From Glycera tridactyla (Eukaryota), in NCBI GenBank assembly GCA_965644265.1, contig OZ286459.1:34906001-34970000 (forward strand): a DNA stretch of 64,000 nt, given 5' to 3'. Numbering within the stretch: the stretch's first letter is position 1; each line of letters opens with the position of its first letter. Below, one piece after another: positions 844 through 36,554 of this stretch. The notes under the pieces are model-generated. The model searched no databases. It saw nothing but the letters and a program-made list of their open reading frames with translations, and had not been told where the DNA came from. Made by a program: the position numbers and the translations under genes.

Positions 844-953
844 CTGTTGATGAGCCCAATTTGTGGTAGCCAAGACAGGGAGGCTGGTAAAGTGGTCCAC
901 ATAATACCTCCGTAGTCCTCCGGATTCCACACCAGATGTACATCATTCCAATG
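844..953 (-). CDS. Copy A exon 4 ([36 protein letters not shown])
   Basis: 110 bp; acceptor gtttccag, donor GTAAAT. Confidence 0.94.
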
Positions 954-3900
954 CTGGAAACAACCATAAATACAATTCAAGATGAGTAAGTAGCTGGTGT
1001 GTGTGGGGGGGGGGGGGCAGTCGAACATGTATGGGGTATCCATCCACGTGTGCATCGTTGTGTGCACTGGTATGTGGTTGATTGATTGATTGATAATTGA
1101 TTGATTGATATCTATTGGTATATATCAACCCAAAACATTATACACGCTGTGTGTACCTGAATTATACAAGTTGGATGTTCTGTCCTCTGAAGGCGTCGAT
1201 CACACAACGCTGAACACAAGTTGTGAAGGTAGCTGACAGTTCAGATACAACTTACTGTACCTCAAATGAACCTGACTTAACTTATCGATGGCATATCTAA
1301 CTATGTAATCGACTGGATGTTAAAAGACTATGATATCCAGGTCTGATTGCAATGCTTTCATTGATGAGTGAAAATACCAGAGATATGCTTCGATTGCTGA
1401 TTTGAGCTAATGACACGATTGGGGGTACGTTGAAATTAGTTAGAACCTCGTATTAATTGTATAGTATATTTGACGCTTGATACCTGTCCTGATACCCAGT
1501 TTGCATTAGTTTGTGATACGACCCTCCGGGGTCTCGCGTTATTTTGTTTGTTGTTCCTGTTATTCGTTACATTTACTTATGCAATAAACAACACTTATCT
1601 TATCTTATCTTATCTTATCTTATCTTATAAGGGAGGACGACACAGTACTTGAAACAAGGAAATGCTTCAGGTCCTGAGAGTACCTAACAAATGTTTTCCT
1701 TTTTGGAAACTTCACAGCGATGTGTGGAGGTCAATTTGCAGTCATATATCATTTATGGGAGCAGTGAACAATACTACCACTTACCATTGTCAACTCGACA
1801 GATGTAGACAGCACCTGGTTGCGTCCATCCTATAATATAAGCATACTCAGAGGGAGGACACTTAAAATATTCGAAACACCATACNNNNNNNNNNNNNNNN
1901 NNNNNNNNNNNNNNNNNNNNNNNNNNNNNNNNNNNNNNNNNNNNNNNNNNNNNNNNNNNNNNNNNNNNNNNNNNNNNNNNNNNNNNNNNNNNNNNNNNNN
2001 NNNNNNNNNNNNNNNNNNNNNNNNNNNNNNNNNNNNNNNNNNNNNNNNNNNNNNNNNNNNNNNNNNNNNGGATCCGGTTTTACTTTGTGAAAAATATCTA
2101 CTATCATTACAGGATATATATGTCCCTGGGATATCATTGTCTCCAAATATTCCAGGGGTAGGGCTTCAGGGAAGGTGGTTACATTCACAAGATTCAGAGA
2201 CAAATCTGTTTCATGAAAAGATGAATCTGTGGTTATTGAATGGAAAACTATATCCCACTTGGGCACACTGCCAAGATATTGCACCCGTCTTGTGTCCTCG
2301 TTATATCTCAATGAACTCTCACCTCATGGGATATCATAATATAAAGTGGAGTACCACAAATCCTGGATATATTAGCTTTCGTAGTGTGTGAGTTTTTTTC
2401 TCAATTGTAAGTGAATACACAAGACAAAATCCTTCATTGATTTGGTTTTGGTATAGTTTGAGAGCAGCAGCTGGATTATATTGGAATGCTCATGCAATCG
2501 GCATAGGTGAGAACACCCAAGACTTGTCCTCGATACCCAGTGAAGGGTGGAAATCTATGATTGTTTAACATCTCTGTGATGAGGAGTGGCAGAAGTGAGA
2601 ATCGTACCAGTTCGATGATTTGCAGGAGATGCATGAAGAGTGAGAGATCGAGAGGAGTTTTCTCAGTTACGGGCAGAGTGGCTTTATAACCAGACATCAG
2701 GTCATCAAATAGCGAGTCATACGGAGTGGTCACTGCAATCAGAGTACACAGTATACAACCAATAGTGGCAGGTTACAGTCAAAACAAGAGTGCTTAGTCA
2801 CTCAGTGGAGAAATTGCACAATCGGTATTTGCTTATAGTGAAACAGTGCCAGCTTCCAAGCTCCACCTCCTGCCTGCTAAGACTCTACCAACCATCTCTT
2901 TGACTGGAATCGCACGGTTTTACCTACGTGGCATTCCCAGATTTGTTCATTTGTTTGTTTGACTGTTTTGACTGATCTCGGTCCAGTACTACTAGAACGT
3001 CCCCTAGGCCCCAAGAATCAGTGAGGTTATTCCCCAAAACTGGGGATTATATATCGTGTTTCTGTCTCTATTTGGAACTCCCCTGGTCAGGTGATACATC
3101 AGGTGACATAGTCATGTGACATCTCTCCTCCACTCACGTGTAACTCATGGAGCATGACAAGCGCGCTCAAGCTCAGTGCACATGCTCCCCTCCCCCATGC
3201 CGAAAGCATGGTCACTGGAGCATGTCCATCGACATCGGCGAGGTTATTCACGTGTCGTTACACATAAGTCACCCCATGCCATTGGTATGGCGGCTTTGCT
3301 GATACAATTCTGCATGTATGGTTTTATACGAATTTATTGAACTAACACTACCACTGGCCGACGCAGCTCCCCCATTTGCCCCATTAACAACGGTCCATAC
3401 TAAACTGGACATGCTGCATGTGGTTCACAATAGATGGTTGGAAAAGGTCAAATATCATGGATATCGTCAGACTCCCTGAACAAGCGAATCGCGGATATAG
3501 GTTTGTTAAGTAAATAGAGAAAATCTGCTCTGAGCTAGTGGTTTCATCTGATGTAGATCCCAGTGTTGACCTGTGTGAGTTCGAAAGATCGCTTAAATAA
3601 GGGCCAGACTGGAACAAGAAAAGGAGTCTGCAAGTAAATCCAAGCTTTGTATATACGTAAAACGGCAGGCTAATGAACCTATATCCCTTGTGCAGTCGAG
3701 GCTGACACAAAACGAAAGATCCCTGGTAGACAGGTTTCCTTGTGAAATACTCCCGATAGAGTTTAGGTTAGGCAGGGATGGTGGTAAAGAGCTGTGAGAA
3801 AGATGTTTGTGATGTGTGATGAGGGCCAAATTGAGGATGAGGTTCATTTCGTGTTAGGCTGCCCTGCATATGTGGAGACAGGATGTAGCATATTGGAACA

Positions 3901-9900: not shown

Positions 9901-12691
9901 CTGATGCAATAATGGCCTGCCACATTTTGTGGTCTTCCATGCACGACTTGATTAAAGCTGCAGATCACATTCCTGTGTCTTGTCTTAGTTGGTCATCAAA
10001 GGTGTATTGGTGTTCACCAAGTGAAGCTACCCCTTGGGCTGGCTCCCACAAGATGGGGTGCCGACTGCCAGTTCCTGGTGTCACATGCAGTGTCCAGCCA
10101 TTCAGAGGAGGTTGGTCCTAATTTTCCTGGAGACTCAAGTGAGTTCAGCATACAGGATCTGAGTCTTAATGCAGGATAGATTAAACAGTTGCAACAAATA
10201 GCTCCCTCTTTAGGCTCTCAGCCATGTCAGACTGCCACATTCTCAACTTCATGGAGAGCCTGCCAAGCTCGGCTTTTCCATATTCTGATGTCTTTCTCTG
10301 ACAAGCTGATGTAGGAGCCAAGGTACTTGAAGTCTGCCTTGACTGCTAGGACTGACTTGTCCAATTTCTTGATCTTGACATCTTTGATGTTATATGCCAG
10401 CACCTTTGCATTGAACCTTAGTCCCACTTTTCTGCATTCCTATTCCATGCTCAAAAGCAACTGTTGTTTCCTGCTTGATACAGTCAGATACCGGTGCAAT
10501 GTCATCTGCGAAGTCTAGGTCAGTTTGTTTCATGGGCTCAACTCGTCTGCTCTTTCTGGGAGTCACTGTGAAGCCATATTGTTCCTCTTTTCCTGATATC
10601 ACCTGACATAGCACATAGTCAAGGAGGATTATGAACAGATATGGTGCCAATTCGTCTCCCTGTAGAACACAAGAGAGTATGGAGGAAGTTCTCGTTTCCC
10701 TATCAGGTGAAAACACTGTAATTGTCAATCTTGGTTAGGTCTCCAGATTTAGGGATAGGTATGATGTTGAGGTCTGTCCATTGATCTGAGAGCTCTTGGG
10801 CTATGTGTGCCTTATTACATATATAGAGTACAATCAATATGGACCCAACCATCTACACCTGAGACCATTTCACAGAAGAATCAATAGAAGCCTAGGATAG
10901 AACAGACCTGTTAATAGTTCAGTGAAAAATGATTAACAAGCGATGAATAAATAAGAAGACATCTTTTTATCCTCCACACCACGGACCTACATTAGATACG
11001 TCCATGTCCACATTGAAAGCTATTGAGAAAATAGAGGAGGTGCTGCTACACCTAGGCCAGATCATCCATGATGGCAACACTTAAAAGTAAATATCCCTCA
11101 TTCATTGGTGGCTGCCATCTATAGAGACCCTGGTCTTCAACTCTATCCACATGCTATGGGCAGTGTGAGCCATATGCAATATTCATGGAGTTGAATGATC
11201 TCAGCTCTTGGCAGCGATTGTCAATAGGCTGGCAAATACTGAATACCTGTAATGAATATCTGACCAGTTAATTACTGGAATTTTTATGGATTACATCCCT
11301 AGTTCATGGCATTATTGACATGCCAAGTATTGCAGAAATACATATAAAAAAATCTATCAAGTGCACATTTCATCGTGAGATATATAAATTACTCGGTCAC
11401 ATGGGATTTCACGTGGACAATAGCCATGTGAAAACTAGTCGAACTTGTCCCGCATGCGTTCTTCCATTTTATCCTAAGAAAAATTAAATTTTCTCCCACC
11501 TCTCGTTGCACTTCCTGCCTGCTTACATCGGTCCACACAATTCTTAATATCTCTGAGGATGGCTTTTATACAACATATCAGTCATGAAGATGATTTCTGT
11601 GCTTACCATGATGCGGGTTCATGTTGAAAATCTGAAGTTTGAGATCACACCGAAAGTGCTCATGTGATTTACCCCATAAGTCAACCACATTCAGAAAAGA
11701 GAAGCGCAAGAACTTTTTGGTAGTCAGCCACTTCATTTCCATTTCGGAAGTAATTTCCTTCATAATTTGGTATCCACCACCACCACCACCACTACCACCA
11801 CCACCACCACCAACAACATCAACAACAACAACAACCAGCCGACCACCAACCCATGCAGTTTCCAGCCAGTTACATAGTTAGATATTCCATCTTCGGGTTC
11901 ATTATGTTCATGTTGAGGAGTTGGAGGTGTGTCAGAACTGTTAGCTACTTCCACTTGACAACCCTTCAGGTCCCCCATCATCTTGTGTTCTGAGTTTGTG
12001 TGAGTGATGTCTGCAGAGGAGAGAACATATAGATTGTATTGACCAGGAACCTACAATACACATAATCCTCTGGGTTGGTACATGTCGTTAAACCCAACCA
12101 CCACCCACCCACCACCCACCCACCAAGCACACACCACCCACCCACCCACCACCCACCCACGGCGGTGTTGCCGTGAGCTGCGCTGATGTCAGGTCAGAAA
12201 TGACATTACAACCCTGATCTACAGAACGTAGCACTTATTCGGACACTCCATCAAAACAGGGGATATTCTCACATCATATTAATGTTCATCAGGTGATATT
12301 TCACCCGAGAAAAAAGTTCAATACAGACACGAGGTGCAATTTTACAGCGTTTACGCGAAATTCTCTGCATATTGGTGAATTCCGTGTTATTAAATCGATT
12401 CTGTGATTCCGTGAGGAATTTCTGTATAGCAGTATATGACTGGCCCTAATGATGCCATTATAAAAATCAGTTCATGTTAAGTACAGATTAATCACAGCGG
12501 GAACTACGTTGGTGGGATGAACGGAAATGTGTTGCTTGGGGCAAAGTCGACGATATATTTAGACAATACCTAAGAAATAGTTGGCTCATCACCAGTGTGC
12601 GCCATCTTGGACACTCACCATTCATGGCTTGAGTTGATAATAGCTGCAGTAGAGTCACCAGTAGGAGAAGGCTACTGTGGATGCCCTTCAT
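844..12691 (-). CDS. Divergent nAChR-like subunit, copy A, exons 1-4 (12619-12691, 2608-2732, 1785-1829, 844-953); remainder lies left of the window
   Basis: Same exon lengths (73/125/45/110 bp) and phases as copy B; 96 of 117 visible residues identical by hand count; open frame. Confidence 0.9.
1785..1829 (-). CDS. Copy A exon 3 ([15 protein letters not shown])
   Basis: 45 bp; donor GTAAGT; differs from copy B only by two synonymous changes. Confidence 0.92.
2608..2732 (-). CDS. Copy A exon 2 ([42 protein letters not shown])
   Basis: 125 bp; acceptor ctgattgcag, donor GTACGA. Confidence 0.92.
3720..4030 (+). mobile_element. LINE 3'-end relic (Cys/His knuckle), intron 1 of copy A; counterpart at ~29880-30130 in copy B
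   Basis: Translates to CDEGQIEDEVHFVLGCPAY, the C-x2-C...EDE.HF...CP.Y C-terminal motif of non-LTR elements; same position in both paralogues. Confidence 0.7.
4720..4960 (-). mobile_element. RTE-clade LINE C-terminal fragment
   Basis: RRPKLAGHCLRHPELPASSLLLWEP motif. Confidence 0.75.
4995..6330 (-). mobile_element. CR1/L2-type LINE reverse transcriptase relic, frameshifted
   Basis: GIPQGSILGPLLFILYMND, YADDT, FLDLKKAFNTVD, QSGFRKVHS and YKYLG motifs across broken frames. Confidence 0.9.
6409..7935 (+). repeat. ~1.5-kb direct segmental duplication; partner at 9065-10487
   Basis: Near-identical sequence starting cttggagagttagtgctttatcg at 6409 and 9065 (offset 2656); the second copy lacks a ~120-bp internal piece. 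Confidence 0.92.
7260..7935 (-). mobile_element. RTE LINE relic inside duplicated block
   Basis: FKYLGFYISSSEKDIRIWKSRA and following RTE C-terminal motifs. Confidence 0.8.
7933..8600 (-). mobile_element. Internally deleted CR1/L2 piece (endonuclease start fused to pre-RT region), two tandem 297-bp copies
   Basis: AHLNVRSM...CLSKTWL (APE endonuclease) runs directly into TATFTPIHK...QSGFREVHSTTT; units start at 7933 and 8230. Confidence 0.85.
9910..10870 (-). mobile_element. RTE LINE RT relic; counterpart at ~31300-31780 and ~32110-32690 in copy B intron 1
   Basis: VLQGDELAPYLFIILLDYVL and DLDFADDIA motifs. Confidence 0.88.
11775..12160. repeat. (CCA/CAA)n and CCAC low-complexity tracts flanking a SINE-like family-2 copy (~11860-12100)
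   Basis: Visible simple repeats; the middle matches 31880-32120 and the reverse complement of 17195-17375. Confidence 0.8.
12619..12691 (-). CDS. Copy A exon 1, signal peptide MKGIHSSLLLLVTLLQLLSTQAMN
   Basis: Donor G|GTGAGT; splices to exon 2 giving ...AMNVTT (an N-glycosylation sequon); upstream in-frame ATG at 12709. Confidence 0.85.
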
Positions 12692-14704
12692 CAGGATGGT
12701 CACCGCCATCAGAAAATACGGCACGATCTAAGCTGGGTATTATGGCAGGTTTGGTTTATAGGTCCAGGTTTAACAGGACTATGTCTGCCGTGTGTTCCTG
12801 ATCAATGAATTGCACCAATAGGTATAGGAGAGGCTGGATACAGTATATACACCGTATTTATTTGCTGCATGTCATTGTGTGTATGGAGGGGGGGGGGGGG
12901 TGGTCACCATCGAGATCTTACATCCTGGCAGTGCACCTCCCAGCATATTGCAATTGTTGCATATCGATCTTGCATCAGCTAGAAGCAACTTGATTGGTGG
13001 GCTGTTTGTTTTATTACACATGGACGTTACCTGTGCTATATTAGGACACCCATGGAATGGGCATGGGCGGGATCATTCGACTCCCCCAATGGGCTCATCC
13101 AAGACTCTTCCACTTGTGTTCTGGATTAAAGGTGATACCATATAAAAATCAGACGCACAGATTGCCATTTCAGAAAACTTTACCTGTTATTATTCGAGCA
13201 CCATCAGTGCAATATTGTAATGCCCTTGCAAGTTAAATGGTCAGCACCGGAAAGTAAATCCTTGTGAAATCCTCGACATTCGATAGCCAGCGGTGGTATG
13301 ATTCGGGATTTTGATGCAGCAACACCATTTAGAAGACCAGATTTCTAATGCATACTGACCGGAGGCAGATAGCCACGTCTAATGCGATGTCTCTCAATGG
13401 AGCCAAATAAAAAGGCCACCTACCTACAAAATCAACCCTAGGCCAATGCAATGGGCTAGGCTGCGATCATTCATGACCTCCTGGATCCCCAACGGGAGGC
13501 GAAAATTTATCAAATTCATAGACACTAAAGGTGTCATTTCTGTTACTGAAAATGTTGGTCATGGTGCTACCCTGTTGCTACAAGGTCAGTAACTGGCTGG
13601 AAGTTGAAATGCCTGAAAGACTTCAAAATGATATGCATTTCCATCTGGACTTTGTAGAACTCGTATCCCCAGAACTTCTTCACCGATCCACGCCAAATCA
13701 ACTTAGCCTGAAGCATCTTGATGTGATGGGCGGTTGAAATGTTTGATGGTATGGACTTGGAGGAATCAATATTTTGTGGACTGCGGCATCAATCCACACT
13801 GGATCAACTTTTCCTGAAGCATCTCAATGTGAAGATGTGCACGGGCTCCTTTACTCCGGGCATGGACCAGTGATGGGCTACCCTATGGTCAGTTGAAAAG
13901 CCTGAAACACTTCAGAATGGCATGCACTCTGTGGAACCCATATATTCAAAGCCATTGCATTGATTCATATTGAAACTACTCTTCCTGGTGTGTCTCATTG
14001 TTTACATGTGCATTGGCACCTTTATTCAGGGCTTGGGTGAGTGCTGGGCTGCCCATGGGCAGTTGAAGAGCTTAAAACGCTTCTTAATGGCATGTATATA
14101 CTGACTCATTTATTCTGGGATTGGTCAAGTGAAGGGCTGCTTACAGGTAGTTGATGTATTGATTCACACCAGATCAATGTTACATTTAGCATTTTGCTGA
14201 GTGAACATGGGCTGACATATTTATCCACTTCAAAGCTTGGGTAGGTGATAAGATACTTATTGGCAGTTCAAATGGCAGAGGTGCTCACTGTAATAGCTGC
14301 TACACCGGTGGAGGACCTTACATCACTGATGCCTAGTATTGTTTCTGGATTGAAAACTGGTATCTTCCTCTATGCAAGACAATGGGTACCCAGTATGCTA
14401 GAGTGATTCCTTTCTCACCACGTGTTGATTCGCATGGTTGTATCACTTCCGCTTATGATCGAGCTGGTTGAATACCATGTGACACCTGTTTTGTAGAATG
14501 GTCCGGAAATGAATGACAGTTCGATCATGGCACTTGAGTACCTCGTTATGAGGGTACATCCAGGTTCCACACGCATATGCACCAGCATGAATACGAATTC
14601 ACATACAAGGAGTGAAATATTTATTATTCCTGAGTGTAGATGACATTGTAGACAAAATCAGCAACAACATAGGTATACTATTCATGTCCTCATGAGAATT
14701 GTGT

Positions 14705-14940
14705 GTGTGATTGTTTGTTTGGGTTTAACGTCCTTTCAACCACTTTGGGTTATATCAGACTGATGAAAGTGCTGAAGAAAAGAGGCACCACTGCTGGGGC
14801 TGTCTCTAATCTTCGCAAGAGACAGCTGTGGTTCTTTTATGTGCATACACAAATATATTCCTATATACACGGCCTGCTTTTGATATCCCAGTCAGGATGC
14901 TCTGGGTTTGACCTCACAAGATGGGGTAGACACTCAAGGT
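14705..14940 (-). mobile_element. SINE-like family 3 copy; others at ~27660-27900 and ~37900-38040
   Basis: Shared body (gggttatatcagactg...gctgaag...gacagcagtggttctttta) with (AAAC)n-type tail after gttaaaccc. Confidence 0.6.
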
Positions 14941-15439
14941 GCAGAAGTAAATATGATGAATGATAGTAAGTACCTGATACAGGTAGTTAAATGGTAGACA
15001 TGGTGGGGTCTACACAGTGGGGGCCACAGAGCGTTCCCTCTCCTCAAAATATATATCTGGCACCAAAAATGTGTAAAGTGGCACTGCTGTAACAGACAAA
15101 CCATCAACAACCGACACAGGAATAAGGAGACGGTTTTTCGCATACGATAAGATAGCTATGAATTAACAATTAACCCCAGAGGAGTGTATCACATGCTTAT
15201 GCAATCAGGTATCTTATCTACTATCCGAATCAACAATTTTGGATAACATTCATGTGCAATTGTAGGAAACATAGTGAGCGGTATGAGGTGCAAATATGAT
15301 AGTGGTAAAGACAATAAATATGGAGCTCTGGTGAACAGTGGGAATGGTTAGCACAGTTGTTGGCAGTGAGTCAGTGGAGTACCCCCTCCAGAATCACCAA
15401 GATTGAGCAGATTTTGCTTGGTTATGAATTCATTGGCTT

Positions 15440-18185: not shown

Positions 18186-18691
18186 CTAATTCCCTGCTTG
18201 GTCCAACGGGTACGTTATGAGCAAGCTCATGGTACCCAGCCCGACGATCATCATGTAAACAATGAGAAATATGCGATCGAGCACACGAGCCGCCAGATGC
18301 CACTCTCTGCCTTGCTTCTCTTCTTCTGCGTCCTGCTTCTTGGACTCCGCCATCTGGTGTATTTCTTCAGCAATCGATTCGATGACTGGCGTCTGGTGGG
18401 GTAAAGGAGCACTACTCAAGTGACGCTCTTCATGGCTGACAGCATGGCTTAAATCGACCTCCTGTGGGTGTGTCTTTTGGTGAATATGCAATCGCTTGAT
18501 TGCAGTTTGGGCATTTTGCCCCATTTCCGTCGAATCTGTCAAGTGGAGTATTCGCCCTAGCTTGTTGATCAGTATTAAACGAAGGAGGGGTGGTATTGGA
18601 CGAGCGGGATCTCTGTAGTGAATGTTCAACGTGACCACTGTGCAGACCAAGGACAAGCCCGTGATCACCATGATGCCAGCGAGGTAAACAC
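18186..18691 (-). CDS. Copy B exon 8 (M3, intracellular loop, MA, M4, stop)
   Basis: Acceptor gtttcag, phase 1; [29 protein letters not shown]...[30 protein letters not shown]; TAG at 18186-18188; AATAAA about 250 bp downstream (17929-17934). Confidence 0.95.
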
Positions 18692-21559: not shown

Positions 21560-21618
<59 letters not shown>

Positions 21619-24600
21619 AAAGGGGGCAGGCACACAGGCAGACCAATATGCATAGGTGCTGGATAAACAGACACTGAGAAACAAATGTAGACACAGATTC
21701 AGAGAGATTGACAAAGAGGTATTCATCGAAATAGAGGATGAGACTGTCACACTGACATTGCTTTTCTACTACTATATAGACTCCTGTATTTCTTCAAATC
21801 CTTCATTCTCGGGACTGATGCATCTTCTGAGATGGCACCATCCTTTTTTTAGTTTCACATTTCAAGGGTGAAACTAATTGTCCTTGTTGAACTTTCATCA
21901 GATGGGAATCCGTGGAGATATCCTGTCAATCCACTTTTGTTTCAATTCCCATTACGACATCCAAATACCACTGAAGGGCATGATGAGACCTGTGTGTTTT
22001 GACAATGTGTTGTTTTGACCTATTATTTTTGCACTGAGCTTGAGATAGCGGTGGACCTCTTGATGTCACATACCCTTCACATGCCGATGATACCCGAGGA
22101 ATACCAATGTACCAGATTCAAACATTCCAACAAGTATATGTAAATGTTCATATTCTTTCACATCGTTTAAATATGATTCATTCTTTTTATCTCCTTTAAT
22201 GATTAGGAACACATGGCACAGTATTCTCTGGGTTAATACATGCCATTGATAATTAGGAACACATGGCAGAGTATTCTCTGGGTAAATACATGCCATTGAT
22301 AATTAGGAACACATGGCAGAGTATTCTCTGGGTTAATACATGCCATTGATAATTAGGAACACATGGCAGAGTATCCTCTGGGTAAATACATGACATTGAT
22401 AATTAGGAACACATGGCAGAGTATTCTCTGGGTTAATACATGCCATTGATAATTAGGAACACATGGCAGAGTATTCTCTGGGTTAATACATGCCATTGAT
22501 AATTAGGAACACATGGCAGAGTATTCTCTGGGTTAATGCATGCCATTGATAATTAGGAACACATGGCAGAACATCCTCTGGGTTGATACATGCCGTCAAC
22601 CAACCTTAACCAATCTAGCTATGCACAGGCACAGTCAAGTCATTTTGAGGATTGTCTGAGTTGTGTGGGTTATATTGAAATGTGCCAATAGAAAGTATCG
22701 AAGTACTCAAAAAATCGGTTTTCCATGGTTGCGTGGCAATCGCCAGTGGTGCATTTGCTAGGTATACGCGATTAGTAACAGTAATATGTCTTCCCCCTCT
22801 TTCGTGTTCATTATTAGACAGGTCTACTTGAATACAACACTAGTTATGTAACAGTAATATTAACGACAATAATTATAATAGCTGTGCCCTCATAGTGGCA
22901 CCATAATGCGCCTTTGTTGCAGCTTCATAATGAATGACGTACAAATCGAGATGGTGTACTTGTGTGTAATCTATTAGTGCGATTCAAGTGCTGAGACAAC
23001 ATATCCCAGCGCACAACGATAATTCTGTTGGGCATGTTCATCACAGTCTGTCAAGTCTGGATGGGACGAATATCTTTTCTGATAAAGTGTATCTCACAGA
23101 CATTGTAGACATCTTCCGGCGACTTGGAATTGGATCTCAATGAAGTTTGATCACACATTTGACCCGTGGGTATCAAAGCTGTCAGGCTTTTACAAAGAGG
23201 ATGGTGGTCGTTTCGCATGGTTTCAGTTGATAATATCGAAAGAATCACCTTATGAACGCAATGAATGAAATCAGAAAAGAGTCATTGTAACTGTAACTCT
23301 GATCAGATGAGATATGGTGACTTATGAGAATCATACCCCGATCTAACAGAACTAACTGTCTGTATGTCTATACCCTCCTCTCTCCTCCCTATCTACCTAT
23401 CCAACCATCCATTCAGTCANNNNNNNNNNNNNNNNNNNNNNNNNNNNNNNNNNNNNNNNNNNNNNNNNNNNNNNNNNNNNNNNNNNNNNNNNNNNNNNNN
23501 NNNNNNNNNNNNNNNNNNNNNNNNNNNNNNNNNNNNNNNNNNNNNNNNNNNNNNNNNNNNNNNNNNNNNNNNNNNNNNNNNNNNNNNNNNNNNNNNNNNN
23601 NNNNNNNNNNNNNNNNNNNNNNNNNNNNNNNNNNNNNNNNNNNNNNNNNNNNNNNNNNNNNNNTTGGTGCGGGTTGACGTCTTCTTGAGCAGTTCAAACT
23701 CTTTACTCCCGGTGTAGAATTCCAGGTTGATCTCATCATGTTGTGCTATCAGGTTGACCATTTTCACCCCATGAACCAGGTTACCAATCTACAGCATGCA
23801 ATAATATACTGTCTGCAAACTGCTATCATATCAATTCGACATCACAGCAAACTGCTATCATATCGATCTGACATCACAGCAAACTGCTATCATATCAATT
23901 CGACATCACAGCAAACTGCTATCATATCGATCTGACATCACAGCAAACTGCTATCATATCAATCCGACATCACAGCAAACTGCTATCATATCAATCCAAC
24001 ATCATAGCAAACTGCTATCATATCAATTCGACATCACAGCAAACTGCTATCATATCAATCCAACATCACAGCAAACTGCTATCATATCAATCCAACATCA
24101 TAGCAAACTGCTATCATATCAATCCGACATCACATCAAACTGCTATCATATCAATCCGGCATAATAGCAAACTGCTATCATATCAATCCAGCATCACAGT
24201 AAACTGCTATCATATCAATCTGACATCACAGCAAACTGCTATCATATCAATCCGACATCACATCAAACTGCTATCATATCAATCCGGCATCACAGCAAAC
24301 TGCTATCATATCAATCCGGCATCACAGTAAACTGCTATCATATCAATCTGACATCACAGCAAACTGCTATCATATCAATCCGACATCACAGCAAACTGCT
24401 ATCATATCAATCCAACATCATAGCAAACTGCTATCATATCAATTCGACATCACAGCAAACTGCTATCATATCAATTCGACATCACAGCAAACTGCTATCA
24501 TATCAATCCAACATCATAGCAAACTGCTATCATATCAATTCAACATCATAGCAAACTGCTATCATAACAATCCAACATCACATCAAACTGCTATCATATC

Positions 24601-27600
24601 AATCCGGCATAACAGCAAACTGCTATCATATCAATCCGGCATCACAGTAAACTGCTATCATATCAATCTGACATCACAGCAAACTGCTATCATATCAATC
24701 CGACATCACAGCAAACTGCTATCATATCAATCCGGCATAACAGCAAACTGCTATCATATCAATCCGGCATCACAGTTAACTGCTATCATAACAATCCAAC
24801 ATCACAGTAAACTGCTATCATATCAATCAGGCATCACAGTAAACTGCTATCATATCAATCCGGCATCACAGTAAACTGCTATCATATCAATCCGGCATCA
24901 CAGCAAACTGCTATCATATCAATCTGGCATCACAGTAAACTGCTATCATATCAATCCAACATCATAGCAAACTGCTATCATATCAATCCAGCATCCCAGT
25001 AAACTGCTATCATATCAATCCGGCATCACAGTAAACTGCTATCATATCAATCCGGCATCACAGTAAACTGCTATCATATCAATTCGGCATCACAGTAAAC
25101 TGCTATCATATCAATCTGGCATCACAGTAAACTGCTATCATATAAATCCAACATCATAGCAAACTGCTATCATATCAATCCAGCATCCCAGTAAACTGCT
25201 ATCATATCAATCCGGCAGAACAGTAAACTGCTATCATATAAATCCGGCATAACAGCAAACTGCTATCATATCAATCCGGCATCACAGTAAACTGCTATCA
25301 TCTCAATCCGGCATCACAGTAAACTGCTATCATATCAATTCGGCATCACAGTAAACTGCTATCATATAAATCCGGCATCACAACAAACTGTTATCATATC
25401 AAATTGCTTTTACATCGATTACATCTTTTGTCAAATCACTGTTGTATTTTTCTTCTATCATATCAACCTGCTGTTATATCAAACTGCTATTCTAATGATC
25501 TGCCCTCTAATTGAATTGCTCCCATACTAAAGTCCTCTCATTTCAAACTGCCATCATATCAGACTGCTCTCATACCAAACTGCTCCCATATCAAACTTCT
25601 ACCATATCAAACCGCTCTCATACCAAACTGCTATCATATTAGACTGCTCCCATATTGAACTGTTCCCACATTAAACTGTCATATTAAACTGTTCCCATAT
25701 CAAACTGCTCCCATATCAAACTGCTCCCATATTAAACTGCTCCCATATTAAATTGTTCCCATATCAAACTGCTCCCATATTAAACTGCTCTCATATCAAA
25801 CTGCTCCCATATCAAACTGTTCCCATATCAAACTGTCCCCATACCAAACTGCTATCATATCAAACTGCTCTCATATCAAACTGCTATCATATTAGACTGC
25901 TCCCATATTGAACTGTTCCCACATTAAACTGTCATATTAAACTGTTCCCATATCAAACTGCTCTCATATCAAACTGCTCCCATATTAAACTGTTCCAATA
26001 TTAAACTGTTCCTATATGAAACTGTTCCCATATCAAACTGCTCTCATATCAAACTGCTGCCATATTAAACTGTTCCCATATTAAACTGTTCCCATACAAA
26101 ACTGTTCCCATATCAAACTGCTTCCATATCAAACTGCTCTCATATCAAACTGATGCCATATTAAACTGTTCCCATATCAAACTGCTTCCATATCAAACTG
26201 CTCTCATATCAAACTGATGCCATATTAAACTGTTCCCATATCAAACTGTCCCCATACCAAACTGCTCTCATATCAAACTGCTGCGATATTAAACTGTTCC
26301 CATATTAAACTGTTCCTATATCAAACTGTTCCCATATCAAACTGCTCTCATATCGAACCGCTGCCATATTAAACTGTTTCCATATTAAACTGTTCCCATA
26401 TTAAACTGTTCCCATATCAAACTGTTCCCATATCAAACTGCTTCCATATCAAACTGCTCTCATATCAAACTGTTCCCATATTAAACTGTTCCCATATTGA
26501 ACTGTTCCCATATCGAACTGCTTCCATATCAAACTGCTATGGAATCAAATTTATCTCTCATCAAACCGCTATCAAATCAAACAGCTAGCACAAAAAGCTG
26601 CTGGCACATCAACCTGCCAGCATACCAAATGCTATCATATCAAAAAACTATCACTTCCACATAATAGTGGTATCACACCAAACTATACATTGATAACAAA
26701 CTACTATCATATGATAGCTTGACATGCTAGCAGCTTGATGTGCTAGCAAATTGATGTGGCAGCAGTTTAACATGATAGCAATTTGATGTGCTAGCAGCTT
26801 GATATTATAGCAGTTTGATGTGCTAGTAGACTGGTACGTTAGCAAATTGATGTACTAGCAGTTTGCTCTGCGAGCAGATGAAGAGGACATGTGTCCTCTA
26901 AATAGGTTATAACGGAAGTGATCATTCATGAGAATCACATTCGGAGATCTGAAGAGAATATATGATCAAGGTCAACTCTTTGCTATGTCTGGACGGGTGG
27001 TTGAATGCATGCAGACGAGGGTGTCTGCATGGATGAATAGGCAGATGCATGGATGCATGCACAGATGCATGCGTGTATGGTGGTTGAATGAATGGATGGA
27101 GCGATGGACGTAGGAATGGCAAGTTGATAGAAGGGCGGATAAAGAGCTAAGTGGAGAAAGGATGGATGGATGGATGAATGATTGATAAAGAAAAAGATGA
27201 ATAAATGGATGGATGGATGGATGGATGGATGGATGGATGGATGGATGGACGAACGGATGGATGGATGGATGGATGGGGTAATTAACCATGTGATCATCCG
27301 GTCATTTTCACTCAAACTGGATCGAATGGATAATTTGGGAGTGGAACAAAAAATTCACAAGTGATGCCAGAATGGAGTAATCCCAAAAGAAATTTGGCTA
27401 AAGTACGAATGATTTGACCGAAAGTGGGACAGGACACACCAAATTGACCTCTGCTGAGTGGGTGAGAGAGATTAGAGGTAATCGACAAACTTACAGTGAT
27501 CTTGCATTTCTGGACGTCAAATGGGAAGAACTGCATATTGAGCGTACATGAGGAGTGGAAGACAGCGGTCACCTTCCAGTAAACGCCACCATCATATGCA

Positions 27601-28728
27601 AAAATCACAGGGAAGAACTGCTCCCAATTCTCGTCCCGTACAACTCCAACACTGCAAACACACAAGTTTGTTTGTTTGTCAGGGTTTAACATCCCCTCGG
27701 GCTGTTTGGCTTACATCAGACTGAAAAAACTGAAAATGCTGAAGAACTGAGGCATCACTGGTGGGGGCAGTCCCTACTTTTAGCAAAGGACAGCAGCGGT
27801 TCTCTCACATGCATACAGTAATAGACTCCCATACACACGGCTAGCCTTTGATATCCTAGTCGGCATGCACTGGGTTTGGGAGTGGGACGAGAATCTAGGA
27901 CGATATATGGAATGATGATGGTATGGCCATTTTCTCTTTATATGAAATAAGATTCTGGTTTGAGAACGAAATTTCATACATGCCTCAGTTCATCGACATT
28001 TCACAACCACTCTCTAAAAGCAAGGATATACGCTAGGAGTGATGCGATAGTCCTAACCAAATCTGATCAAAGATGGTGGCATGAAAATATAATGACACTA
28101 CTAGAAAATTATAGTGGTTGCATGCAACATAAGATAAGCCTTTTGTATATCTGCTCTAATATTGACAGACATTCTATTCACGTTTACGCCAGATGCCCCG
28201 AATCACTGACCAGGGTTGCCTACTGACTCATGATTGAATAAATATCAAAATAAAATTCGTGACTTTATACAGATCACTGAGACCCTGCTGAGGTATCACT
28301 AGTTGATCGGTTCAAATTTAACGTCACATCAGCTGTTAGCCCCATGCAATGGGCATGAGAGTGATCATTCAAGACTCATTCAAGATTCCTGGCCCCTAAC
28401 TGCAGGTTAAATGATATGAAATTTAGAGACTCACAAGGTATCATCTCATCCTTGCTGAGGTATCATCTTTAACAGGTGTTAACATGTGGATATCCACTTG
28501 TGAGAATGTGATATGCACTTTGTGGGATGATTTCCAAATGAAGAAAGAATCACAAGCTGAGAAGAGGTGCCAGAGGCTGTTTACCTGTTAATGAGCCCGA
28601 TTTGTGGTACCCAAGATTGGGAGGCTGTTAAAGTGCTCAACATGATACCTCCGTAGTCGTCCGGATTCCACACCAGATGTACATCATCCCAATGCTGGAA
28701 ACAACCATAAATGGATTGCAACTCGAGA

Positions 28729-28817
<89 letters not shown>

Positions 28818-31800
28818 CCACCCACCTGTCCGTCGATACCCATCCATCGACCGATACACACTCCCACCAACCGATCCACCTACCCCACCCACCCACCCAA
28901 CCTTCCATCCATCCATCCATCCATCCATCCATCCACCTATCCACCCACCCACAGATCTGAAACTGGGAAACACTTTCTGAGGATAACTAACAAATGTCTT
29001 CACTCATGAACAGGCTACGTCAAATCAGCCTTGCAGTCATATATCGTTATGGGCAGTGAACAATAATACCACCTACCATTGTCAACTCGACAGACGTAGA
29101 CAGGACCTGGTTGCGTCCATCCTAAAATATAAGCATACTCAGGTGGGTAAGGATGAGATCATCCAAGACTCTTCCTTCTTGGTCTCCAGTGGAAGGTGAA
29201 TATGTATGAAATGTTATCATTTTTGTGATTGGAGTATCGAAAGTGGGGATATTACCAGTTCGATGATCTGCAGGAGATGCATGGAGATGGTGAGATCGAG
29301 AGGGCGGTTGTCGGCTGAGGGCAGGGTGGCTTTATAACCCGACATCAGATCATCAAATAGCAAGTCATACGGGGTGGTCACTGAAATTAAAAGTTCACAG
29401 TATACAAGCAATAGTGGCAGGTTACAATGAAAAGGAGAGCACCAAGGCGCAAAGTGGAGAAATTGCACAATCGGTATTGCTCATGGTGAAAGTGCCTGCT
29501 TAGAATTGCAAGATTTTAAATAGATGGCATTCACAGATTTGACCAATTATCAGCAGTCCATACTGAAATTGAAATGGTACATAGCTTTACAACAGATGGT
29601 TAGAAATGGTCAAATATTACAGATATGATAAGACCGCCAGAACAAGATAATTGCAGATATTGTCTGGGTAAATAGTATAGAGAAAATCTATTCTAAGCTA
29701 GTGGTTTCATCTATTCTAGATGTTTGAGAGATCATTCATAATTAGGGTCAGATAAGGACAAGAGAAGAAGGTTGCAAGTAAACCAGAGCTTCGTGTATGT
29801 ATAAAACAGAAGGAGGCTAATGAACTAATATCCTGTATGCAGTGGGGGCTGACACAAAATCAAAAAGCCCTTGAAGCCAAGTTCCCTTGCGTGACACTCC
29901 CGATTGAGTTTGACAAAGAGCTGGAAGCGAGATGCTTATGATATGTGATGAGGGCAAAATTGAGGATGAGGTTCATTTCGCGTTAGGCTGCCCTGCATAT
30001 GTGGAGACAGGATGTAGCATATTGGGACACATGAAGATCTTGAACATTTTCACAGTCTTAAGCGACATTGGTGAGTTGAAGTGCAAATGCAAAATGCGAA
30101 ATATGAAGTTGTCAGGCCGATTCCTGATAGAGATCGGGGGGGGGGGAGAATCTCTATTTGTCCTATATTATCACCTGTATAAAACAACCTGAAACTTAAG
30201 AGAAATGACACCTTGAGTGTCTGTGAATTTCACAAATTTTCGCCTTCTGTTAGGGATCCAGAAGGAGGAGTCTTGAATGATCCCACCCATGCCCATTGCA
30301 TGGGCGTCACAATATAGCCCAGATGGAGCGGACGTGACGTTAAACCCCCAACAAAACAAACAAACAACCTGGAACTCATTCTCAAAACACTAACATCAAA
30401 TATAGAAAATCCCATAACCATCCACTGATCATGGTTCCAGTATCGGGCCCTGTTCACTGACAAATCTGGAATCAGTTATGTACAAAAATTGTGCATTGGA
30501 TTACAACCTAAGCATAGATCCATGCTTATCACACGATCTTGTTTATAGAAAAGTAAACTGAGATATCACATGTAATCACAGAACCCACGAGATCAAACAG
30601 AAAGCAATACCTGGGTGGCTGGGGGAGGGTTACATTGCCATACAACCGGCCTGAACCAGGTGGGAATGAAGCCACGTGGTGGGTAGAAATCGACTGATCT
30701 CTCGGGCAACAATCAGTCGTCGTGTACCTAGCTCAAACACTAATGATTTCTGTCATAATCAACGCCAACTCTACTCAGGGATCTCATCACTACGGGGATG
30801 GTTGATTGATTGAGCGTTATCTGTGCTATATTGAGAGGCCCATGCAATGAGTATAGGTGGGATCATTCAAGACCCCTTCTGGGTTCAATGCGGTGGTATA
30901 CTTTGTAAATGAAATGTGTGGATGTTGCACAGGCATTCTGTTTGGTTAGAGCAAATGTGTTGTGTCCTCTGTCTAACATGAGCATGATGAATTCAACGAT
31001 TGCATACATAATTATGTGACTGACTGGGAACTGACATCCAAGCCTAGCAAATGAGCCAATGGTTTCATTTCAAGCAAGTTGAAGTACTTGATTTTTTTTT
31101 TGATTTTTTTATTTGAGGTTTGACGGCATGTATCAATCCTAGTGTTATATGCCGCGTTTTTGTGGCTGATGAAAGCTAGATGTTCTCTTCCCTGATGATG
31201 GGGAACCTGAAAGGTTGTCAAGTGGAAGTAGCTGACAGCTCAGACACACCTCTACCTACTCTACATAAACATCATCATCATCACGTTGGATCTCCTCGGA
31301 CGATAATGGCATGCCAGACTTTGCAGTCTTTTATGCACGACTTGATTCCAGCTGCAGATCACATTCCTGTGTCTTGTCTCAGTTGACAAAGGTGTATTGT
31401 TCTTCACCATGTGGTGCTGCCCCATGGGCCGGCTCTCATCGGATGAGGTTGCTGACTGCCAGTTCCTGGTGTAGCATGCATTGTTCAGCCATTTTGAGGC
31501 AGTTAGTTCTAATTTTCCTGGAGTCTTGAGGGAGTTCACCATACAGAATCTCATTCCGGACATGATCTTTCCATGAGTCATTTAAGGCCATTCTGAGCAT
31601 GCATGTGAACACTCATCGAGCCTTGCTTCATGTTCCATAGTGAGTGTCCAAGCTTCTAAGCCATAACGCAGGATAGATTCAACTTTCGCAACAAAGCTAC
31701 CTCTTGCGGCTATCAGCCATGCCAGACTGCCACATATTCTTAAGTTTATGAAGAGCAAGCCAAGCTTGACAGTTTGTAATTGAACAGATTGGTCGAGTAT

Positions 31801-33621
31801 CCTATGAATCTAATGCTTTTCCTTGTGTCAAGTGCTGCGCTTCGCAAAAAAAAACATTGCTATCAGGCTTGAGTGTTATCATCCAGCCAGTTACATATTC
31901 AGATATGCCATCATTAGATTCGGTCTTTTATGAAGAGTAGGTAGAGGTGTGTCTGAACTGTCAACTACTTCCATCTGACAACCTTCCAGGTTCCCCACTA
32001 TCTTGTCTTCAAGGCTTGTGAGAGAGATGTCTGCAGGGAAGAGAAAACCTAGCTTTCATTGACTACGAACACACGGCTTACATAACCCTAGGGTTGATAC
32101 TTGCCTTTAAACCTCAAACAAACAGACGAGCTTTCCGTATTCTTATGTCTTTCCCTGATGTGCTGATGTAGGAGCTAAGGTATTTAAAGTCTGCTTTCAC
32201 TGCTAGGACTGACTTGTTGAATGTCTCAGACTTCTTTGAGTTGAGTCTCAGTCCCACTTGTCTGCATCCCTGCTCTACACTCATGGGCGACTGTTGTGCC
32301 AACTCGATAATGTCAGATACCAGTGATGTCGTCTGCAATGTCTAGGTCAGTTTGTTTCATGGGCCAAACTTTTCTGCTTTTCCTCGGAGTCAGTATGAAG
32401 CCATATTGGTGCCAATTTGTCTCCCTGTAGAACACCTGCCAGTATGGAGAAAGTGACGAGGATGAGTCGTATTCTGTGTGTTCAGATTCATCCTGTTGAA
32501 GACTAGTACTGAACTGAGACTGATACCTCTGTAGTTGTCAGTCTTGGTTATGTCTCCAGTTTTAGGGATAGTTATGATTTTGAGTACTGTCCACTTTTTG
32601 TGAGTTCTTGGTCTATGTGTGCCTTGTTACATGATATATAGAGTACAAGGTCATCGACATGGGCCCAGCCACCTACACCTGAGACCATTTCACTGACAGA
32701 ACAAGAAAAGCCTAGGATGGAACAGAAGTGAAGAAAGAGACCTGTAAATGGTCGAGTGAAAAATATTGAATAACAAATGTCTGATAATCAAGAAAACATA
32801 TTCTATCCTGCACACCACGGACCTACATTAGATACGTCCATGTCCACACCAAAAGCTATTCAGAAAAAAGAGAGGGATGGTGCTACACCTAGGCCAGATC
32901 CCCCATGATGGCAACACTTCATAGTGAATGTCCCACACCCAATGGTGACTGCCAGCTATAGAGACCCTGGTCCTCAACCCTATCCACACGTTGTGGGCAG
33001 TGAGCCATATGCAATATTCATGGAGTTGAATAATCCCAGCTCTCAGCAGCGAATGTCAATAGACTGACAATTACTGGACGCCTGTGATGAATATCAATTG
33101 CTGACCAGTCGATAACTTGAATTGTTATAAATTACATCACTCGTTCACGGCATCATGGACATACCAAGTATTGAAGAAATACATGATAAGGGAAATCTAC
33201 CGATTGGAAATTTCATCGTGAGATATATAGATATATCTCCGTTGCAAGGGCTTTTATGTGAACAATAGCTATGTGGGAACTGGTCGAACTTGTCTCAAGT
33301 ATGATGCCATGATCAAAATCAATCCAGGATCGGTATCATGAACGATGGGTCTTCTCCAGGGTGTAAAGATGTGAATACTATTGCGATAATGAAAAAGTTC
33401 ATGATCAGTACAGGTTAATGACAGCGGGTAATACGTTGGTGGCATGGACAGAAGTAATGCATTGGCTAGGGTGAAGTCGACGATATATTCATACAATACC
33501 TAAGAAATAGATGGCCCATCACCAGCGTGCGCTGTCTAGAACACTCACCATTCATGGCTTGAGATGATGATACCTGCAGTAGAATCACCAGTAGGAGAAG
33601 GCTACAGTGTATGCCCTTCAT
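18186..33621 (-). CDS. Divergent nAChR-like Cys-loop ligand-gated cation channel subunit, copy B; 8 coding exons: 33549-33621, 29256-29380, 29077-29121, 28585-28694, 27495-27651, <23664-23788, 20364-20602, 18186-18691
   Basis: Exons join with GT-AG ends and compatible phases (junction 6/7 lies in a gap). The product has a signal peptide, N-terminal helix, the 45-bp and 110-bp exons typical of nAChR genes, Cys-loop [15 protein letters not shown] (C-x13-C), pre-M1 RKP, M2 [24 protein letters not shown]3, MA helix/M4 ([13 protein letters not shown]) and a TAG stop. No stops or frameshifts in the visible exons. Confidence 0.93.
20364..20602 (-). CDS. Copy B exon 7 (beta10, M1, M2, M2-M3 loop)
   Basis: 239 bp; acceptor cttcctag, donor GTAAGT; [14 protein letters not shown]...[33 protein letters not shown]. 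Confidence 0.95.
21561..21616. repeat. (GA)n microsatellite
   Basis: Direct reading. Confidence 0.97.
22199..22596 (+). repeat. 50-bp minisatellite, 8 copies
   Basis: ttaggaacac recurs every 50 bp from 22203 to 22553. Confidence 0.96.
23664..23788 (-). CDS. Copy B exon 6, partial ([41 protein letters not shown]...), 3' end lost in N-gap 23420-23663
   Basis: Phase-0 acceptor ctgtag; aligns to loop B, loop F and beta9 (canonical FGSWTY...NGEW). Confidence 0.85.
23815..25402 (+). repeat. 32-bp minisatellite, ~50 copies (aaactgctatcatatcaatccgacatcacagc)
   Basis: Period of 32 read from successive tgctatcata positions (23821, 23853...). Confidence 0.96.
25540..26868. repeat. 16-bp minisatellite (caaactgytcccatat), degenerating rightward and inverting after ~26710
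   Basis: Period 16; reverse-orientation units (gatgtgctagcagttt-like) from 26711 to 26868. Confidence 0.9.
27160..27275. repeat. (GGAT)n tetranucleotide repeat
   Basis: Direct reading. Confidence 0.95.
27495..27651 (-). CDS. Copy B exon 5, containing loop E and the Cys-loop
   Basis: 157 bp; acceptor gtttgcag, donor GTAAGT; [17 protein letters not shown]. Confidence 0.95.
28585..28694 (-). CDS. Copy B exon 4 ([36 protein letters not shown])
   Basis: 110-bp exon with W..D..L.WNP.DYGG and WxP motifs; acceptor gtttccag, donor GTAAAC. Confidence 0.94.
28728..28950. repeat. (TC)n microsatellite followed by (CCAT)n/CCAC tract, next to the exon 4 acceptor
   Basis: Direct reading. Confidence 0.95.
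29077..29121 (-). CDS. Copy B exon 3 ([15 protein letters not shown])
   Basis: 45-bp AG/GT-bounded exon equivalent to the canonical nAChR DEKNQ...WLQM exon; missed by the ORF track. Confidence 0.92.
29256..29380 (-). CDS. Copy B exon 2 ([42 protein letters not shown])
   Basis: 125 bp; acceptor ttttaatttcag, donor GTAATA; alpha1 helix and beta1 strand of a pLGIC extracellular domain. Confidence 0.92.
30190..30367 (+). mobile_element. SINE-like family 1 copy, best-preserved example; ~15 copies or fragments between 575 and 39909
   Basis: Consensus ...gagtcttgaatgatcccacccatgcccattgcatgggcgtcacaatatagcac...gacgtgacgttaaacc + (AAAC)n tail; copies near 575, 13000, 13420, 19435, 20180, 28310, 30810, 33945, 34105, 34590, 38040, 38455, 38565, 39525, 39830. 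Confidence 0.7.
33549..33621 (-). CDS. Copy B exon 1, signal peptide [24 protein letters not shown]
   Basis: Hydrophobic N-terminus ending at phase-1 donor G|GTGAGT; homologous to 12619-12691. An in-frame upstream ATG lies at 33639. Confidence 0.85.
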
Positions 33622-36545: not shown

Positions 36546-36554
36546 CTGTGTAGT

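What the first reader, a model, noticed from the sequence alone, without database searches (positions are those of the whole stretch)
844..33621. Tandem nAChR-like channels that have lost the acetylcholine aromatic box: candidate orphan or chemosensory receptor cluster
Seen: hand alignment to alpha7/alpha1. Loop D W55 is Glu (STSVELTM vs TTNIWLQM) and loop A Y93 is Ile (WxPQIGLIN vs WxPDIVLYN) in BOTH copies. In copy B, loop B W149 is Leu (IGNLVHG vs FGSWTY) and the Y198 position aligns to Ile (YVIGNIEF vs YPDITY). Frames are open, splice sites canonical, and exon 3 differs between copies only at synonymous sites. Established: these aromatics form the cation-pi cage for ACh and related amines. 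Cephalopod chemotactile receptors are a known case of nAChR-derived, tandemly expanded channels that lost this cage and sense other chemicals. Inference: these are functional channels for a non-cholinergic ligand or other stimulus, in a lineage-specific expanding family.
Basis: partly seen in the sequence, partly recalled or inferred. Interest (0 to 1): 0.8.

Follow-up and report, generated by a model that had tools for sequence, protein, structure and literature searches.

The report
Divergent orphan nicotinic-type channel gene pair
Two neighbouring worm genes encode nicotinic-receptor-like ion channel subunits that kept a normal cation pore but lost three key acetylcholine-binding residues; this kind of orphan is already known from the large receptor expansions of worms and molluscs, and its ligand is unknown.

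Summary
The core observation holds. Two paralogous nAChR-like genes lie in tandem on the minus strand. Copy B spans 33639-18189 and has at least 8 exons. Copy A starts at 12709, and only its exons 1-4 are in the window.

Three independent alignments show loop D Trp to Glu and loop A Tyr to Ile in both copies, and loop B Trp to Leu in copy B. All visible splice sites are AG/GT. Exon 3 differs only at two synonymous sites.

Two limits apply:
- Copy B's exon 6 reads open straight into the assembly gap at 23420-23663. The tip of loop C is therefore unread, and the "Tyr198 to Ile" claim cannot be settled.
- Copy A runs off the window after exon 4.

The genes look functional. Shared exons carry no indel, while aligned non-coding DNA has 2.8 gap openings per 100 nt. 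dN/dS is about 0.5. The Cys-loop, the pre-M1 and M2-M3 motifs and a canonical cationic M2 pore are intact.

No protein I recovered is more than about 30-39% identical. The branch is very long and its place in the tree is unstable, outside every canonical subunit group in my sample.

No RNA run was listed, so expression and the chemosensory idea are untested. I read this as a new member of the known lophotrochozoan orphan nAChR-like expansions, not a new kind.

The parts
33549..33639 (-). Copy B exon 1: ATG at 33639 (second in-frame ATG at 33621), putative signal peptide, donor GTGAGT, phase 1
   Evidence: Read from DNA. It is 91% identical to exon 1 of copy A, against about 80% in the flanks. 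There is no homology support, as expected for a signal peptide.
29256..29380 (-). Copy B exon 2: N-terminal helix and beta1 (ends ...LLQIIEL)
   Evidence: AG/GT sites. Aligns to the N-terminal part of alpha7 and alpha1.
29077..29121 (-). Copy B exon 3 (45 nt): beta1-beta2 loop and loop [16 protein letters not shown]. Glu stands where Trp55 would be.
28585..28694 (-). Copy B exon 4: [16 protein letters not shown]...WVPQIGLIN. Loop A has Ile where Tyr93 would be.
   Evidence: Pfam PF02931, E 6e-06. HMMER alignment to alpha1 structures. Also.
27495..27651 (-). Copy B exon 5: loop E and an intact Cys-loop, C-x13-C with FPFD
   Evidence: Pfam PF02931, E 4e-10. PDB nAChR hits.
23664..23788 (-). Copy B exon 6 (partial): loop B IGNLVHG with Leu where Trp149 would be, then loop F. 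The frame runs open into the assembly gap.
   Evidence: No PDB match when searched alone.
23420..23663 (.). Assembly gap that hides the end of exon 6 or its donor, and therefore the tip of loop C
20364..20602 (-). Copy B exon 7: end of loop C (x-YVIGNIEF), pre-M1, M1, M2 (GEK...9'L...13'V...20'D) and the M2-M3 loop
   Evidence: Pfam PF02932, E 6e-13. Alignment to human alpha7, E 1.3e-17.
18189..18691 (-). Copy B exon 8: M3, intracellular domain, MA helix, M4 and the stop codon
   Evidence: Pfam PF02932, E 4e-17. The best library relative is only 39% identical.
12619..12709 (-). Copy A exon 1 (ATG, signal peptide)
2608..2732 (-). Copy A exon 2
1885..2069 (.). Assembly gap inside intron 2 of copy A. 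No exon is affected as far as can be seen.
1785..1829 (-). Copy A exon 3: loop D with Glu. It differs from copy B at two synonymous sites only.
844..953 (-). Copy A exon 4: loop A WLPQIGLIN with Ile. The gene continues beyond the window start.

Best explanation
The window holds a segmental tandem duplication with a unit of about 21 kb. It covers introns and about 400 bp upstream of the start codon. The duplicated gene is intron-rich and encodes a very divergent nicotinic-type (cationic Cys-loop) channel subunit, in what earlier notes of this scan call an annelid genome.

Shown:
- Both copies are kept in frame by selection.
- Copy B keeps the Cys-loop, the pre-M1 Arg, the M2-M3 loop Pro and a textbook cation pore: -1' Glu, 2' Ser, 6' Thr, 9' Leu, 13' Val and 20' Asp.
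- Both copies have replaced loop D Trp with Glu and loop A Tyr with Ile. Copy B has also replaced loop B Trp with Leu.

Inferred:
- Neither face of this subunit can build the classical cation-pi cage, so it does not bind acetylcholine in the classical way at its own interfaces.
- It most likely works as a cation-conducting subunit in one of two ways. It may be gated by some other ligand, or it may serve as a non-binding accessory subunit beside acetylcholine-binding partners.

I file it as a fast-evolving orphan of the known lophotrochozoan nAChR-like expansions.
For: - Gene models and canonical splice sites.
- Pfam LBD and membrane domains.
- Nearest solved structures are nAChR subunits and alpha7.
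- The three substitutions appear in three kinds of alignment.
- The M2 and M2-M3 region aligns without a gap to human alpha7 with the pore residues conserved.
- Selection: shared exons are 89% identical with 0 indels in 371 nt. Aligned non-coding DNA has a 16.6% mismatch rate and 2.8 gap openings per 100 nt, so about 10 indels would be expected. dN/dS is about 0.5, one-sided p 0.04.
- Divergence: the best relative of exon 8 among 1.84 billion representatives is 39% identical, and full-length relatives are 25-30% identical.
- Tree: very long end branch, unstable placement, outside the starred alpha7, alpha1-6/beta/gamma and ACR-16/alpha10-like groups.
- Literature: large tandem nAChR expansions in molluscs and annelids (PMC6896357), and orphan annelid nAChR-like channels (PMC10338036).
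Against: - No transcript evidence was available; no RNA run was listed.
- Copy B's coding sequence is interrupted by an assembly gap, so an intact full-length frame is not proven.
- Copy A is seen only for exons 1-4.
- The dN/dS test is marginal and covers only 123 codons.
- Loop C aromatics could still be present.
- The beta1-beta2 loop has Gly at the position that I align, by eye, with the coupling Glu45 of alpha subunits (DGRNQ against DEKNQ). This was not examined further.
Confidence: 0.7

Rival explanations
1. It is an accessory (structural) subunit. It binds no ligand itself and co-assembles with acetylcholine-binding subunits to tune assembly, conductance or desensitisation. From general knowledge, vertebrate beta1, alpha5 and beta3 behave this way.
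For: - The canonical cationic pore and coupling motifs are kept while the binding residues on both faces are lost.
- Known subunits lose the residues of a face they do not use. Fish gamma has Glu and Gln at the loop A and loop B positions, and frog alpha1 has Arg at the loop D position.
Against: - It does not nest with any canonical non-alpha group in my trees.
- Loss at all three positions is rare in my sample: 3 of 245 full-length relatives have no aromatic at any of them, and one of those is gaps only.
- No co-expression data exist.
Confidence: 0.3
2. It is a chemosensory channel, convergent with cephalopod chemotactile receptors. It would be expressed in sensory epithelia and gated by environmental molecules through a remodelled hydrophobic or acidic pocket.
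For: - The aromatic cage is replaced by aliphatic and acidic residues (Ile, Leu, Glu).
- It is tandemly duplicated and fast evolving.
- Precedent exists in octopus and squid, as cited in PMC10338036.
Against: - There are no expression data at all.
- Only two copies were seen in the window.
- There is no special sequence affinity to CRs.
- Alpo4 shows that such orphans can resist wide ligand screens, so a lost or odd site does not by itself indicate chemosensation (PMC10338036).
Confidence: 0.12
3. It is a decaying duplicate or an assembly artefact. One or both copies would be pseudogenes, and their odd residues would reflect relaxed constraint.
For: - The branch is very long.
- dN/dS is 0.5, not very low.
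- Exon 6 sits between a 1.6-kb minisatellite and an assembly gap.
- The introns are full of retroelement fragments.
Against: - No stop codon or frameshift occurs in any visible exon of either copy.
- There are zero indels in 371 shared exonic nt, against about 10 expected at the intronic rate.
- All splice sites are intact.
- The functional motifs are intact.
- The same three-residue state is conserved between copies that differ by about 19% at synonymous sites.
Confidence: 0.1

Closest known systems
Lophotrochozoan nAChR-like gene expansions (Jiao et al. 2019, PMC6896357; 649 sequences in 25 families in De Gieter et al. 2023, PMC10338036)
   Same: - A nicotinic-type Cys-loop subunit in a lophotrochozoan.
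- Tandem duplication.
- A highly divergent ligand-binding domain.
- Other members from my searches also lack some box residues. Lineus has Thr/Ser/Leu at the three positions; Physella has Gly and Leu at loops D and B; Helobdella has Leu and Met at loops D and A.
   Different: - It is intron-rich (at least 8 exons), not the intron-poor retrogene type emphasised for bivalves.
- No relative above about 39% identity was recovered.
- Loss at all three of loops D, A and B is rare in my sample.
Alpo4, orphan nAChR-like channel of the annelid Alvinella pompejana (PDB 8BX5/8BYI; PMC10338036)
   Same: - An annelid orphan about 27-30% identical to nAChR alpha subunits.
- An isolated position in trees.
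- Alpo4 lacks the vicinal Cys pair in loop C. In copy B the loop C tip is unread, and none is seen in what can be read.
   Different: - Alpo4 keeps the aromatic residues F103, W159, Y199, Y205 and W65 (paper). This gene has Ile, Leu and Glu at the loop A, B and D positions.
- Alpo4 has a 16' Met constriction. This gene has 16' Ile by my numbering from the alpha7 alignment.
- Exon 4 matches Alpo4 no better than it matches muscle alpha1.
Cephalopod chemotactile receptors (octopus CRT1, squid CRB1; PDB 8EIS, 9E6B)
   Same: They are nAChR-derived and tandemly expanded. They lack the acetylcholine signature motifs and keep a cation channel (as cited in PMC10338036).
   Different: - The lineage is different, and this gene shows no sequence affinity to CRs beyond the superfamily level.
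- Sensory expression and hydrophobic ligands are shown for CRs and are entirely untested here.
Vertebrate non-binding or one-face subunits (muscle gamma/delta/beta1, neuronal alpha5/beta3)
   Same: They lose aromatic residues on faces that are not used for agonist binding (fish gamma and frog alpha1 rows).
   Different: - This gene does not nest with them.
- It lacks the key residues of both faces.

Membership tests
Cys-loop pentameric ligand-gated ion channel superfamily | Neur_chan_LBD plus Neur_chan_memb domains | tested here: met
   PF02931 on exons 4 and 5, and PF02932 on exons 7 and 8, all above the curated cut-offs.
Cys-loop pentameric ligand-gated ion channel superfamily | Signature disulfide loop, C-x13-C with FPFD | tested here: met
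   The motif [15 protein letters not shown] is in exon 5 of copy B. Copy A's exon 5 is outside the window.
Nicotinic-type (cationic) branch | Cation-selectivity signature in M2: -1' Glu in GEK, no -2' Pro insertion, 13' Val, 9' Leu gate, 20' acidic ring | tested here: met
   Gapless HMMER alignment of exon 7 to human alpha7 M1-M2-M3. The best PDB hits are all nAChR subunits.
Acetylcholine-binding (alpha-type or complementary) nAChR subunit | Loop D Trp55 | tested here: not met
   Glu in both copies.
Acetylcholine-binding (alpha-type or complementary) nAChR subunit | Loop A Tyr93 | tested here: not met
   Ile in both copies.
Acetylcholine-binding (alpha-type or complementary) nAChR subunit | Loop B Trp149 | tested here: not met
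   Leu in copy B. Copy A was not seen.
Acetylcholine-binding (alpha-type or complementary) nAChR subunit | Loop C Tyr190, vicinal Cys192-Cys193 and Tyr198 | tested here: inconclusive
   The loop C tip lies in the assembly gap at 23420-23663. The Tyr198 position is Ile by gapless extension, but a Tyr lies two residues upstream and HMMER does not align this stretch.
Cephalopod chemotactile receptors | Membership of the cephalopod CR clade, or closer similarity to CRs than to ordinary nAChRs | tested here: not met
   Exon 4 matches 8EIS and 9E6B at E about 0.08-0.09, against 1.5e-5 for alpha1. CRs are absent from the 60 best PDB hits of exons 5 and 7. CR sequences could not be put in a tree because they have no protein id.
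Cephalopod chemotactile receptors | Expression in sensory epithelium and gating by poorly soluble environmental molecules | not testable with these tools
   No RNA run was listed. No functional assay was possible.
Lophotrochozoan expanded nAChR-like genes (Jiao 2019) | Lineage-specific tandem duplicates with a divergent ligand-binding domain in a lophotrochozoan genome | tested here: met
   Tandem pair with collinear intron similarity. Divergence is shown. The host being an annelid rests on earlier notes of this scan, plus the highest identity being to a Paralvinella protein.
Lophotrochozoan expanded nAChR-like genes (Jiao 2019) | Intron-poor retrogene structure (typical of many expanded bivalve copies, not required) | tested here: not met
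   At least 8 coding exons.

The most novel reading that the evidence does not exclude
An annelid lineage has independently turned a nicotinic-type channel into a receptor for non-cholinergic, possibly environmental, ligands. The aromatic cage would be replaced by an Ile/Leu/Glu-lined pocket, and this tandem pair would be part of a still-growing family. That would be a second, convergent case beside the cephalopod chemotactile receptors.
Probability: 0.12. Interest if true: 0.65.

Novelty: new member of a known kind. Interest (0 to 1): 0.3.

Why it matters
If these subunits are expressed and form channels, they add a clean natural example of a nicotinic-type receptor whose orthosteric cage is dismantled on both faces while the pore and gating machinery stay canonical.

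Such genes are the raw material from which new ligand specificities arose in cephalopods. They are candidates for de-orphanisation in annelids.

On present evidence the pair is one more divergent orphan in a phylum-wide expansion that is already documented. It does not open a new question on its own.

Tried and rejected
- RNA evidence: the look-up of sequencing runs on 23664-29500 listed no run.
- Close relatives: the exhaustive representative search with exon 8 gave at best a 39% identical exon-sized fragment from a metagenome contig of 815 bp. Full-length hits were scattered over all animal phyla at 25-30% identity.
- Word searches: a search with a mixed alignment of divergent relatives plus the window's exons (A2), and another with the Lingula relative P0013, brought no closer protein when re-ranked against the copy B model.
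- Alignment A1 (one full-length protein plus exon fragments) scattered the fragments and was discarded.
- The spliced protein has no reference. It therefore could not be handed to the word search, the structure predictor or the atlas. No 3D model of the pocket was made, and the sequence was not typed in.
- Further copies: tblastn of the copy B model against the whole window found only the two copies.
- Clade with Lingula and Lineus: supported in the first tree (SH-aLRT 98) but dissolved when more taxa were added. I treat it as unproven because of long-branch effects.
- The search of earlier findings by sequence and by place near the finding gave nothing.
Full report
**What is there**

Reading the minus strand stop to stop and checking junctions gives two paralogous genes.

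Copy B has these coding exons:
- 33639-33549: start codon and a hydrophobic signal-like peptide
- 29380-29256
- 29121-29077
- 28694-28585
- 27651-27495
- 23788 down to at least 23664
- 20602-20364
- 18691-18189: ends in the stop codon

Copy A lies downstream on the same strand. Its exons are 12709-12619, 2732-2608, 1829-1785 and 953-844, and then the window ends.

Every visible junction is AG...GT and the phases fit. The exons hit Pfam Neur_chan_LBD and Neur_chan_memb above the curated cut-offs. Their best matches among solved structures are nicotinic receptor subunits. A tblastn of the copy B model against the whole window finds only these two copies.

**The assembly gaps, tested first**

The gap at 1885-2069 lies inside intron 2 of copy A, between exon 2 and exon 3, and touches no exon.

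The gap at 23420-23663 is a real problem.
- Exon 6 of copy B reads open up to the last determined base, 23664.
- The only GT sites in the visible exon that would keep phase with exon 7 are poor donors: AGA|GTTTGA and GAC|GTCAAC.
- The exon therefore either continues into the gap or ends at its edge.
- Compared with relatives in alignment A2, I estimate that a few to about a dozen residues are unread. That stretch is the tip of loop C.
- Continuity and frame across the gap are unknown. I did not try to fill it.
- Exon 6 also sits directly beside a 32-nt minisatellite of about 50 copies, so this region is hard to assemble.

**The residues**

Three independent alignments agree:
- HMMER pairwise alignment of the copy B N-terminal model to an alpha7 and an alpha1
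- HMMER alignment of exon 4 alone to solved alpha1 structures
- MAFFT alignments with 22 and with 245 full-length relatives

Each gives the same result:
- Loop D Trp55 is Glu, in both copies.
- Loop A Tyr93 is Ile, in both copies.
- Loop B Trp149 is Leu. This is seen in copy B only, because copy A's exon is outside the window.

The claim that Tyr198 is Ile cannot be decided. HMMER starts its alignment to alpha7 at the Ile of IEF. A gapless back-extension puts Ile at the Tyr position, but a Tyr lies two residues upstream. The rest of loop C is in the gap.

Exon 3 differs between the copies at two sites, both synonymous.

**Are the genes alive?**

- The duplication includes introns and about 400 bp upstream of the start codon. 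Aligned non-coding DNA is 75-83% identical, with a 16.6% mismatch rate and 2.8 gap openings per 100 nt.
- The 371 nt of shared exons are 89% identical and carry no indel, where about ten would be expected at the intronic rate.
- dN/dS over 123 codons is about 0.5. The excess of synonymous changes is only marginally significant, p 0.04.
- In copy B the Cys-loop (C-x13-C with FPFD), the pre-M1 Arg, the M2-M3 loop and the M2 helix align without a gap to human alpha7.
- M2 carries the cation-channel pattern: -1' Glu in GEK, 2' Ser, 6' Thr, 9' Leu, 13' Val and 20' Asp.

This argues for functional, cation-conducting subunits. It does not prove a full open frame for copy B, because of the gap, or for copy A, because it is truncated by the window. 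No public RNA run was listed for this stretch, so expression is untested.

**Relatives**

- An exhaustive search of 1.84 billion cluster representatives with the last exon found nothing above 39% identity. The best hits are exon-sized fragments from metagenome contigs.
- Full-length hits come from every animal phylum at 25-30% identity.
- Two word searches, one with an alignment containing the window's exons and one with the Lingula relative, brought no closer protein.
- In a 39-row tree the gene joined a brachiopod and nemertean group with SH-aLRT 98.
- With 54 rows, including annelid sequences, it moved to a loose set of other long branches with SH-aLRT 89.
- Its end branch is among the longest in both trees.
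- In both trees it lies outside the well-supported groups: alpha7, vertebrate alpha1-6/beta/gamma with arthropod and nematode alphas, and the ACR-16/alpha10-like group.
- In my sample it is therefore not an orthologue of an ordinary structural non-alpha subunit. Its true sister group is unresolved.

**How unusual is the loss?**

My sample of 245 full-length relatives is biased towards fish alpha7. In it, 193 have Trp at loop D, 189 have Tyr at loop A and 216 have Trp at loop B.

Three rows have no aromatic residue at any of the three positions: two nemertean (Lineus) proteins and one row that is only gaps there.

Partial losses are common among divergent lophotrochozoan members and in vertebrate subunits that use only one face. 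Fish gamma has Glu and Gln at the loop A and B positions. Frog alpha1 has Arg at the loop D position.

**Comparison with what is known**

- Massive, largely tandem expansions of nAChR-like genes with very diverse ligand-binding domains are documented for molluscs and annelids (PMC6896357).
- The annelid orphan Alpo4 was screened widely without finding a ligand. Its authors already draw the parallel to cephalopod chemotactile receptors (PMC10338036).
- Alpo4 keeps its aromatic residues, unlike this gene.
- Cephalopod chemotactile receptors in the PDB match exon 4 far more weakly than muscle alpha1 does. Any likeness to them would be convergent and is untested.
- Two other first-reader notes in this genome mention nAChR-like oddities. 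They were not checked here.

**Verdict**

The sequence observation is real, except for the loop C residue. The genes are probably functional orphan subunits of a known kind of expansion. Whether they sense another ligand or act as accessory subunits cannot be told from sequence. The chemosensory idea has no direct support. The result is of moderate-low interest and is a new member of a known kind.

Noticed in passing
window 23815-25402 and 25517-26538: Intron 5 of copy B holds two long minisatellites. One has a 32-nt unit in about 50 copies at 91% match. The other has a 16-nt unit (80-nt higher order) in about 64 copies. They explain the strong GC skew of 24-26 kb. The first ends 27 nt from exon 6, which is itself followed by the assembly gap.
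   Followed up: partly
window 22202-22594: A 50-nt tandem repeat of about 8 copies at 95% match lies in the intron between exons 6 and 7 of copy B. It gives a run of similar open frames on the minus strand.
   Followed up: no
window 40551-43739 (+): Two long open frames carry reverse transcriptase, RNase H and integrase domains. This is an LTR-retrotransposon pol region upstream of copy B. It may be recently active, given open frames of 650 and 408 residues.
   Followed up: partly
window 5020-6047 (-), also about 7700-8400 and 10230-10730: Fragments of non-LTR-type reverse transcriptase (RVT_1) sit in intron 1 of copy A. That intron is about 9.9 kb, against 4.2 kb in copy B. Parts of this repeat recur within the intron (6783-7170 and 9439-9825 both match 30576-30963).
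   Followed up: partly
window 28729-28814: A (TC)43 microsatellite lies about 35 nt upstream of the acceptor of exon 4 in copy B. Copy A has a C-rich and CA-rich stretch at the same place.
   Followed up: no
window 35784-36665 (+): An open frame of 293 residues has no Pfam match. It was not examined further.
   Followed up: no
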